NCBI RefSeq assembly: GCF_006345805.1
Contig: NC_043005.1
Coordinates: forward strand, 17,174,001-17,238,000
Reading direction: 5' to 3'
Length of the DNA: 64,000 nt
Source of the DNA: Octopus sinensis
Taxonomy: Eukaryota
Notes under the pieces: generated by a model
Seen by the model: the letters and a program-made list of their open reading frames with translations, nothing else
Databases searched by the model: none
Told to the model about the DNA's origin: nothing
Position numbers and translations under genes: made by a program
Shown here: piece by piece, positions 32,003 to 32,114 of the stretch
Layout: every line of letters begins with the position of its first letter
Numbering within the stretch: the first letter of the stretch is position 1

Positions 32003-32114
32003 CCAATTTATCCAATTTCCTTCTTGTGAACTTTAAAAGGAAGACCCTTGCTGAAAGACTCTTGACGTCATGGATCACGTGACCCGGCCGATGACGTCAT
32101 GTGCCATTCATTGA
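32003..32114. promoter_or_regulatory. CCAAT x2 / CRE / E-box / CRE motif cluster (probable promoter or enhancer)
   Basis: CCAAT at 32003-32007 and 32012-32016, TGACGTCA at 32063-32070, TCACGTGA at 32075-32082, and ATGACGTCAT at 32091-32100. There are five CpGs in about 40 bp of otherwise CpG-poor, non-repeat sequence. Confidence 0.65.

What the first reader, a model, noticed from the sequence alone, without database searches (positions are those of the whole stretch)
32003..32114. Symmetric CRE / E-box / CRE module with upstream tandem CCAAT boxes
Seen: two perfect TGACGTCA palindromes 29 bp apart flank TCACGTGA (GTCACGTGAT on the minus strand), with two CCAAT boxes about 50 bp away and an Inr-like TCATTG at about 32109. 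This is unique, CpG-retaining DNA in a CpG-poor repeat landscape. Known: TGACGTCA binds CREB/ATF; GTCACGTGAY binds MITF/TFE (CLEAR), USF or CLOCK-type bHLH factors; CRE plus E-box combinations integrate cAMP or activity signals with clock or lysosomal programmes in vertebrates. Inference: this is the most likely functional non-coding element in the window, possibly a bidirectional promoter. There is a plus-strand AACATG MKPLDM at 32188 and a minus-strand donor near 31880. Its target gene is not identifiable from sequence alone.
Basis: partly seen in the sequence, partly recalled or inferred. Interest (0 to 1): 0.7.

Follow-up and report, generated by a model that had tools for sequence, protein, structure and literature searches.

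The report
Promoter-like CRE / E-box motif cluster
A 37-base stretch holds three perfect binding-site palindromes (two CREs around one E-box) that chance cannot explain, and it looks like an ordinary gene promoter or nearby control element, but these tools could find no transcript, target gene or cross-species conservation for it.

Summary
TGACGTCA is at 32063-70 and 32092-99, TCACGTGA at 32075-82, and CCAAT at 32003-07 and 32012-16. The triple is far beyond chance: about 3e-9 expected per window, and about 3e-5 even for the broad class of any three ACGT-core palindromes within 40 bp. It is the only such cluster in 64 kb.

It lies in a 617-bp island (31674-32290) that is single-copy within the window. 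Five CpGs sit in 49 bp (o/e 1.17), against 0.19 for the rest of the island. That pattern suggests constraint or protection from CpG decay.

Best reading: a methylation-sensitive platform for ATF/CREB-type and USF/TFE-type factors, acting as an RNA polymerase II proximal promoter of the common housekeeping type. It may instead be a nearby enhancer.

The CCAAT boxes do not fit the NF-Y consensus. The Inr, the ATG (an 8-codon ORF) and the splice donor are no better than background. Nothing supports bidirectionality or a clock or lysosomal programme.

I found no coding exon, Pfam domain or Rfam RNA. Genome-wide copy number, conservation and transcription could not be tested. In another invertebrate, the same motif triple is carried by a MITE-like transposon, so a transposon origin stays open. 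The element is ordinary in kind and of low to moderate interest.

The parts
32063..32070 (.). CRE 1, perfect palindrome TGACGTCA (context cTTGACGTCATGg)
32075..32082 (.). Class B E-box with flanking T/A, TCACGTGA (GGTCACGTGATC on the minus strand). This is the USF / MiT-TFE type and a 9/10 match to the CLEAR decamer.
32092..32099 (.). CRE 2, perfect palindrome TGACGTCA inside the 10-bp palindrome ATGACGTCAT
32052..32110 (.). Imperfect dyad with 20-nt arms (32052-71 / 32091-110) that are 16/20 complementary around the E-box. Outside the CREs, 7 of the 11 outer flank positions pair (p about 0.01).
   Evidence: no excess folding energy, z about -1
32057..32105 (.). CpG mini-cluster: 5 CpG in 49 bp, GC 59%, o/e 1.17. 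Three of the CpGs are the centres of the three palindromes.
32003..32016 (+). Two CCAAT pentamers (32003-07, 32012-16). Both are poor matches to the NF-Y consensus RRCCAATSR, so their role is doubtful.
32103..32113 (+). These are low-information and common in the window.
32260..32266 (+). TATAAAG, 161 bp downstream of CRE 2 and one of 8 in the window. It is a possible TATA box for a plus-strand start near 32290.
32188..32214 (+). Short ORF ATG...TAA (MKPLDMGL). It is not evidence of a coding exon.
31876..31884 (-). Donor-like AAT|GTAAGA on the minus strand, at the 96th percentile of all GT sites in the window. This is weak evidence.
31674..32290 (.). Island that is single-copy within the window and holds the module. 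Without the module its CpG o/e is 0.19.
31271..31673 (.). Left flank: multi-copy repeat (up to 7 other matches in the window), including a 168-nt unit duplicated in tandem (31274-31441 / 31442-31609)
32290..32884 (.). Right flank: CA/TA microsatellite

Best explanation
The 37-bp core (32063-32099) is most likely a docking platform for dimeric, methylation-sensitive transcription factors. ATF/CREB-family bZIP dimers would bind the two full CREs. A USF- or MiT/TFE-type bHLH-ZIP dimer would bind the T-flanked E-box between them. The platform would act as the proximal part of an RNA polymerase II promoter of the common constitutive (housekeeping) type.

Its transcript is either non-coding or has its next exon outside the reach of my searches. 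Transcription would start within about 50-200 bp of the core. Orientation is undecided. A plus-strand start could lie at about 32105-32115 (Inr-like) or about 32290 (after TATAAAG). A minus-strand start could lie at about 31930-31960.

Shown: the motifs, their non-random clustering, single-copy status in the window and local CpG retention. Inferred: factor binding, promoter activity, the start site and the housekeeping character.
For: (1) Three perfect 8-bp palindromes lie within 37 bp. The strict module is expected 2.8e-9 times per window and the broad class 2.8e-5 times. None appeared in 300 Markov simulations or 100 shuffles. It is the only such cluster in 64 kb.

(2) CpG o/e is 1.17 in the module, 0.19 in the rest of the island and 0.34 in all single-copy DNA. 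CpG decay of the same octamer is visible in this window: a repeat copy at 24636-24500 reads TGACATCA where its sister copy at 22827 reads TGACGTCA. Five intact CpGs in 49 bp therefore point to constraint or protection from decay.

(3) The island is not a repeat inside the window. No LTR or TIR pair brackets it.

(4) In mouse, CRE TGACGTCA, E-box YCACGTGA and CCAAT are among the ten motifs localised just upstream of start sites and associated with RNAPII-bound housekeeping promoters. Their binding is blocked by CpG methylation (PMC2267717). ATF1/ATF3 and USF1/2 co-occupy promoters with NF-Y in human cells (PMC4889920).

(5) If the window is octopus, promoters there carry scant or no methylation, and methylation is concentrated in the bodies of a subset of genes (PMC9476566).

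(6) From my own knowledge, not tested here: a T flanking CACGTG favours USF and MiT/TFE over MYC/MAX, and full palindromic CREs are concentrated within about 200 bp of start sites.
Against: There is no transcript, exon or gene. Six-frame translations of the island gave no database protein hit. Neither did all single-copy stop-free segments of at least 38 aa on the promoter-consistent strands across the whole window. Pfam found nothing in 24-38 kb. Rfam found nothing real.

The donor-like sites, Inr and TATA are no better than background. The CCAAT boxes do not fit the NF-Y consensus or its spacing to the E-box. The region is not a CpG island.

Conservation, chromatin state, methylation and genome-wide copy number could not be examined. 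The same motif triple is carried by a MITE-like transposon in another invertebrate, so motif content alone does not show a host promoter.
Confidence: 0.45

Rival explanations
1. The cluster is a distal or intronic enhancer (or other cis-regulatory module) rather than a promoter. The same factors bind, but the element acts at a distance on a gene outside the window and fires no stable transcript of its own.
For: This has the same statistical and CpG evidence as the promoter reading. In addition, no exon or gene signal appears anywhere in 64 kb. The low CpG o/e of the surrounding single-copy DNA (0.34) would also fit a historically methylated gene body or intron, if the organism has mosaic gene-body methylation (PMC9476566).
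Against: In the species studied so far, CRE, T-flanked CACGTG and CCAAT are position-restricted, promoter-proximal motifs (PMC2267717). No tissue-specific or developmental factor motifs were looked for or seen. Missing exons are equally explained by a non-coding transcript or a long first intron.
Confidence: 0.2
2. The island is a fragment or solo copy of a low- or middle-copy transposable element (solo LTR, MITE or similar), and the CRE/E-box cluster is that element's own promoter or enhancer. It may be inert, or it may later have been co-opted.
For: The window is repeat-rich: 35% is repeated within the window itself. 64 kb cannot reveal low-copy families. A multi-copy repeat in this same window carries a perfect TGACGTCA (22827). 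Of the first 120 loci, 53 are one MITE-like family of about 430-450 bp in animal-type contigs. That family has terminal inverted repeats and an internal cluster CCAAT(inverted) - CRE - CRE/E-box - CRE - CRE. The order CCAAT, then enhancer motifs, then TATAAAG is also what an LTR U3 looks like.
Against: There is no second copy in the window and no terminal inverted or direct repeats or TG...CA ends with target duplications around the island. The window shows no similarity to the MITE-like family beyond the motifs. There are no TE protein domains in 24-38 kb. The rest of the island is strongly CpG-depleted (o/e 0.19) while the module is intact. An old neutral copy would not look like that.
Confidence: 0.2
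3. The cluster is a chance or mutational by-product, for example a small local inverted duplication, with no function.
For: The two CREs share TGACGTCATG, and their flanks are partly complementary (16/20). One small inverted duplication could therefore have produced two of the three sites. All functional evidence is missing.
Against: The expectation under neutral composition is 3e-5 or less per window, and about 1 per 2.7 Gb even for the broadest class. The E-box is a third independent perfect palindrome. Five CpGs survive in a background where CpG is depleted three- to five-fold.
Confidence: 0.05

Closest known systems
Constitutive (housekeeping-type) RNAPII proximal promoters built from CRE, E-box (YCACGTGA) and CCAAT motifs, as catalogued in mouse and human (PMC2267717; NF-Y/USF/ATF co-occupancy, PMC4889920)
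   Same: The octamers are the same (TGACGTCA; TCACGTGA fits YCACGTGA). Every core has a central CpG. The motifs are tightly clustered and CpG is retained locally.
   Different: There is no CpG island around the module (49 bp only) and no Sp1, ETS or NRF-1 sites were noted. The CCAAT boxes do not fit RRCCAATSR and lie 59 bp, not 10-12 bp, from the E-box. No start site or gene is known.
cAMP-inducible CRE + TATA promoters (CREB targets)
   Same: There are two full palindromic CREs, and a TATAAAG lies 161 bp downstream on the plus strand.
   Different: A TATA at that distance is 1 of 8 in the window and may be fortuitous. No inducibility, CREB occupancy or start site is known. From my own knowledge, most full CREs in CpG-containing promoters are constitutive rather than cAMP-inducible.
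CLEAR elements of TFEB/MITF lysosomal-autophagy promoters, and CLOCK/BMAL tandem E-boxes
   Same: The TCACGTGA core with T/A flanks is a 9/10 match to GTCACGTGAC on either strand.
   Different: It is the only intact TCACGTGA in 64 kb; the one other 9/10 match to the CLEAR decamer (GTCATGTGAC, 31186) lacks the CpG core. There is no second E-box 6-7 bp away; the nearest CACGTT is 81 bp upstream (start to start). The target gene is unknown.
Transposon-borne CRE/E-box clusters: the MITE-like family found here in invertebrate-host metagenome contigs, and (from my own knowledge) retroviral LTR U3 regions with CRE-like repeats
   Same: The motif triple is the same, in the same order and within 30-50 bp, and in the MITE-like family a CCAAT box lies next to it.
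   Different: The window's module shares no sequence with that family outside the motifs. It has no terminal repeats and is single-copy in the window.

Membership tests
CREB/ATF-regulated (CRE) promoter | Full palindromic CRE TGACGTCA | tested here: met
   Two perfect copies at 32063 and 32092
CREB/ATF-regulated (CRE) promoter | CRE lies within about 200-300 bp upstream of a mapped transcription start | not testable with these tools
   No transcript data. No exon or RNA gene was found.
CREB/ATF-regulated (CRE) promoter | Downstream TATA box (needed for cAMP inducibility) | tested here: inconclusive
   TATAAAG at 32260, 161 bp from CRE 2, but there are 8 TATAAAG and 65 TATAAA in the window
CREB/ATF-regulated (CRE) promoter | Unmethylated CpG and factor occupancy in vivo | not testable with these tools
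   There is only the indirect sign of CpG retention (o/e 1.17 against 0.19).
NF-Y (CCAAT-box) promoter | CCAAT in the extended consensus RRCCAATSR | tested here: not met
   The sites read TAACCAATTT and TATCCAATTT. Neither appears among the 7 consensus matches of the window.
NF-Y (CCAAT-box) promoter | Stereotyped 10-12 bp CCAAT to E-box spacing of NF-Y/USF modules | tested here: not met
   59 bp separate CCAAT 2 and CACGTG. The rule comes from PMC4889920.
CLEAR / TFEB-MITF target promoter | GTCACGTGAC decamer, usually in several copies near the start of a lysosomal or autophagy gene | tested here: not met
   There is one 9/10 match here (ATCACGTGAC, 32074). The only other near match in 64 kb is GTCATGTGAC at 31186, which lacks the CpG core. 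The gene is unknown.
Circadian CLOCK/BMAL E-box module | Tandem E-box / E'-box pair spaced 6-7 bp | tested here: not met
   There is a single CACGTG at 32076. The nearest CACGTT starts at 31995, 81 bp away start to start.
Bidirectional promoter | Two divergent transcription units starting less than 1 kb apart | tested here: inconclusive
   No exon was detectable on either side, and the donor-like sites are ordinary. Transcript data would be needed.
Vertebrate-type CpG-island promoter | At least 200 bp with GC of at least 50% and CpG o/e of at least 0.6 | tested here: not met
   The CpG-rich stretch is 49 bp, and the island as a whole has GC 40% and o/e 0.36.
Dispersed repeat / transposable element | Multiple copies | tested here: inconclusive
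   There is no second copy in 64 kb. Genome-wide copy number is not testable here.
Dispersed repeat / transposable element | Terminal inverted or long terminal repeats, target-site duplication, TE protein domains | tested here: not met
   Nothing brackets the island. The 86-nt inverted pair 30165/34008 falls in two repeat blocks that each have more than 20 other matches in the window. There are no Pfam domains in 24-38 kb.
Structured RNA gene | Match to an Rfam family or tRNA | tested here: not met
   There were no hits at gathering score and no tRNA. The E-value scan gave only microsatellite-driven mir-297-like noise.

The most novel reading that the evidence does not exclude
The module may be an exapted copy of a mobile CRE - E-box - CRE cassette. 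Under this reading, short transposons carrying this methylation-sensitive triple (like the MITE-like family seen in another invertebrate's contigs) have repeatedly seeded new ATF/CREB- and USF/TFE-responsive promoters in lophotrochozoan genomes. The octopus-like locus would then be one such seeded promoter, driving a lineage-specific non-coding transcript in both directions from its 59-bp dyad.
Probability: 0.06. Interest if true: 0.5.

Novelty: new member of a known kind. Interest (0 to 1): 0.2.

Why it matters
If it is an active promoter or enhancer, it marks an unannotated transcription unit or control point in a repeat-dense region with no visible genes, in a genome where few regulatory elements have been tested. 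It would make a compact, easily mutated test piece: three octamers and five CpGs. With it one could ask whether the CREB/ATF plus USF/TFE promoter grammar, and its sensitivity to CpG methylation, work in this lineage as they do in vertebrates. It does not point to a new kind of element. The motif types, their clustering and their CpG retention are textbook features.

Tried and rejected
- Exact-protein look-ups of four window ORFs were not on record. Raw ORFs of this genome are not indexed, so no orthologous or same-species contigs could be fetched.
- Three database protein searches with chimeric queries returned nothing. They covered six frames of the island, all single-copy stop-free segments of at least 38 aa on the minus strand of 1-32 kb, and the same on the plus strand of 32-64 kb plus the nearest opposite-strand segments. 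Limits: exons inside stop-free stretches shorter than 38 aa, and the unknown coverage of this organism in the database.
- A Pfam scan of all stop-free segments of at least 40 aa in 24-38 kb found no family.
- Rfam at gathering and E-value thresholds, and ARAGORN, found nothing real.
- The hairpin or cruciform idea for the dyad failed: folding energy is not better than shuffles.
- A viral-contig scan gave two phage-like contigs with unrelated tandem operator-like repeats.
- The metagenome scan gave no ortholog of the window. CCAAT is not enriched next to the triple in the 67 singleton loci, 19% against 21% in controls. ORFs pointing away from the triple in those loci gave no consistent picture by eye and were not pursued.
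- Splice-donor, Inr and TATA scoring showed nothing above background.
- The cephalopod ATAC/Hi-C paper (PMC13652810) reports no CREB, USF or NF-Y promoter motif data.

Full report
OBSERVATION. The sequence reads (32052-32110) TGAAAGACTCT TGACGTCA TGGA TCACGTGA CCCGGCCGA TGACGTCA TGTGCCATTCA.
- The two CRE octamers are at 32063-70 and 32092-99.
- The T-flanked E-box is at 32075-82.
- Two plus-strand CCAAT pentamers are at 32003-07 and 32012-16.
- TCATTG is at 32108-13 and the ATG at 32188.
- A minus-strand GTAAGA has its first intron base at 31881.

Two details need correcting. The arrangement is only roughly symmetric: the gaps are 4 and 9 bp and the centre spacings 12 and 17 bp. The ATG opens an 8-codon ORF.

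IS IT MORE THAN CHANCE? Yes for the core, no for the accessories.
- TGACGTCA occurs 3 times in the window against 0.36 expected. The third copy, at 22827, lies in a multi-copy repeat.
- A CRE pair within 15-30 nt never arose in 100 dinucleotide-preserving shuffles.
- A first-order Markov model expects 2.8e-9 strict CRE/E-box/CRE modules per window, about 1e-4 per 2.7 Gb.
- To guard against post-hoc choice I also used the broad class of any three ACGT-core palindromic octamers within 40 bp. That is expected 2.8e-5 times per window, about once per 2.7 Gb, and arose in 0 of 300 simulations.
- This is the only 40-bp stretch in 64 kb with three ACGT.

The accessories look like background.
- CCAAT/ATTGG occurs 107 times in the window, and neither copy here fits RRCCAATSR.
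- Inr-type BBCABW matches number 863 on one strand.
- TATAAAG (32260) is one of 8.
- The best donor-like sites near the module are at or below the 96th percentile of all 8009 GT sites.

CONTEXT. The window is 36% GC, with CpG o/e 0.39 and GpC o/e 1.0. 35% of it is repeated within itself and 7% is simple repeat.

The module sits in a 617-bp island (31674-32290) with no second copy in the window. The island lies between a multi-copy repeat (31271-31673) and a CA/TA microsatellite. No LTR, TIR or target-duplication pair brackets it. The only long inverted pair nearby (30165/34008) falls in two repeat blocks that each have more than 20 other matches in the window.

CpG o/e values:
- 0.34 in single-copy DNA
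- 0.46 in repeats
- 0.19 in the island without the module
- 1.17 in the 49-bp module

Of the 11 mini-clusters in the window with at least 5 CpG per 40 bp, seven lie in repeats. CpG decay of the very same octamer can be seen in the window: a sister repeat copy reads TGACATCA. Five intact CpGs, three of them at the centres of perfect palindromes, therefore argue for constraint or for protection from the process that depletes CpG here.

WHAT IS NOT THERE.
- No Rfam family or tRNA. Weak E-value hits are microsatellite artefacts.
- No believable ORF.
- No Pfam domain in any stop-free segment of at least 40 aa in 24-38 kb.
- No database protein matches the six-frame translation of the island.
- No database protein matches any single-copy stop-free segment of at least 38 aa on the minus strand of 1-32 kb.
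- The same holds for the plus strand of 32-64 kb.
- Exact look-ups of window ORFs found no public contig.

So I could not fetch the organism's own or related genomic DNA. That the organism is a cephalopod, along with conservation, genome-wide copy number, transcription and chromatin state, all remain untested. The negative protein searches are limited by the 38-aa threshold and by unknown database coverage.

The 20-nt imperfect dyad around the E-box (16/20) has no folding advantage over shuffles. Outside the CREs, 7 of the 11 outer flank positions pair, p about 0.01 by my binomial estimate. That hints that the two CREs may share an origin in a small inverted duplication.

RELATED SEQUENCES ELSEWHERE. 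None is homologous to the window beyond the motifs.

53 of the 120 belong to one interspersed family in animal-type contigs. Those contigs carry exon fragments with Pfam Branch and VWA_N matches. The family consensus is about 430-450 bp and has terminal inverted repeats (AAGCTTTAAGCGACCC ... GGGTCGCTTAAAGCTT). Its internal cluster reads GTCGATTGG-TGACGTCA-TCGA-TGACGTCACGTGAC-TA-TGACGTCA-TACTCG-TGACGTCA. That makes it a MITE-like transposon carrying the same grammar.

In the 67 singleton loci, CCAAT is not enriched next to the triple (19% against 21%). Two viral-contig hits are unrelated phage repeats.

MECHANISM. In mouse, CRE (TGACGTCA), E-box (YCACGTGA) and CCAAT (RRCCAATSR) are three of the ten motifs that localise just upstream of start sites and go with RNAPII-bound housekeeping promoters. 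Nuclear factors fail to bind them when the CpG is methylated (PMC2267717). ATF1/ATF3 and USF1/2 cluster with NF-Y at human promoters, with a 10-12 bp CCAAT to E-box rule that is not met here (PMC4889920). [quoted passage not shown] They are concentrated in the bodies of a subset of genes, with scant methylation at promoters and transposons (PMC9476566).

From my own knowledge, a T flanking CACGTG favours USF and MiT/TFE over MYC/MAX.

I therefore commit to the following (confidence 0.45). ATF/CREB-type dimers bind the two CREs and a USF/TFE-type dimer binds the E-box, forming a methylation-sensitive proximal promoter of the constitutive type. Its transcript is non-coding or has a distant second exon.

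The rivals are:
- a distal or intronic enhancer (0.2);
- a low-copy transposon fragment carrying its own regulatory cluster (0.2);
- a functionless by-product (0.05).

These are cAMP x clock or lysosomal integration, a bidirectional promoter, the Inr, the ATG and the donor. There is one E-box only, a 9/10 CLEAR match, no tandem E-box, and signals that look like background.

VERDICT. This is a real, non-random, CpG-retaining cluster of three classical promoter-proximal sites, and probably a functional regulatory element of a well-known kind. Its activity, orientation, target and evolutionary origin are unresolved with these tools. Interest is low to moderate.

Noticed in passing
L004-L114 (e.g. 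L048 1968-2003, L042 2309-2346, L037 3685-3720): A MITE-like interspersed repeat of about 430-450 bp occurs in animal-type metagenome contigs (53 of the first 120 pattern hits). It has terminal inverted repeats AAGCTTTAAGCGACCC/GGGTCGCTTAAAGCTT. Its internal cluster holds four CRE octamers, one overlapping E-box and an inverted CCAAT.
   Followed up: partly
window 22827-22834, with sister copies at 24636-24500 and 54682-54805: The third TGACGTCA of the window lies inside a multi-copy repeat. One sister copy reads TGACATCA (CpG decay) and another has the site deleted.
   Followed up: yes
window 31274-31609: A 168-nt unit is duplicated in tandem at 95% identity, immediately left of the single-copy island. 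The same repeat has copies at 45377, 11929(-), 27431 and 26970.
   Followed up: partly
window 17458-17829 / 18455-18808 and 21562-21780 / 21968-22186: Near-identical stop-free segments recur about 1 kb apart, and again about 406 bp apart. This indicates local tandem duplications of repeat-rich DNA.
   Followed up: no
window 54171-54461 (-) and 2981-3160: Stop-free segments resemble the C-terminal tails of non-LTR retrotransposon ORF2 proteins (...LEKRHHRGDLI..., ...NDQDRWRSVV...). The first coincides with the CpG-densest part of the window (54.2-55.1 kb). I judged this by eye only.
   Followed up: no
window 39576-39629: This is another single-copy CpG mini-cluster (CATCGCAGCAGCTGCCGTCGTCGCCACCGCTAG) in a C/A-rich, proline/histidine-coding-like stretch. 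It gave no protein or Pfam hit.
   Followed up: partly
window 25175-25414, 48188-48475, 52144-52323: A second repeat family is recognisable by the translated motif FLQLDALPNANH in several copies. The copy at 48.2-48.7 kb is the most GC-rich part of the window (54%).
   Followed up: no
L001 8660-8750; L002 660-770: Two viral (phage-like) contigs carry tandem GTGACGTCAC / GTCACGTGAC repeat arrays. These look like operator or iteron repeats and are unrelated to the window.
   Followed up: no
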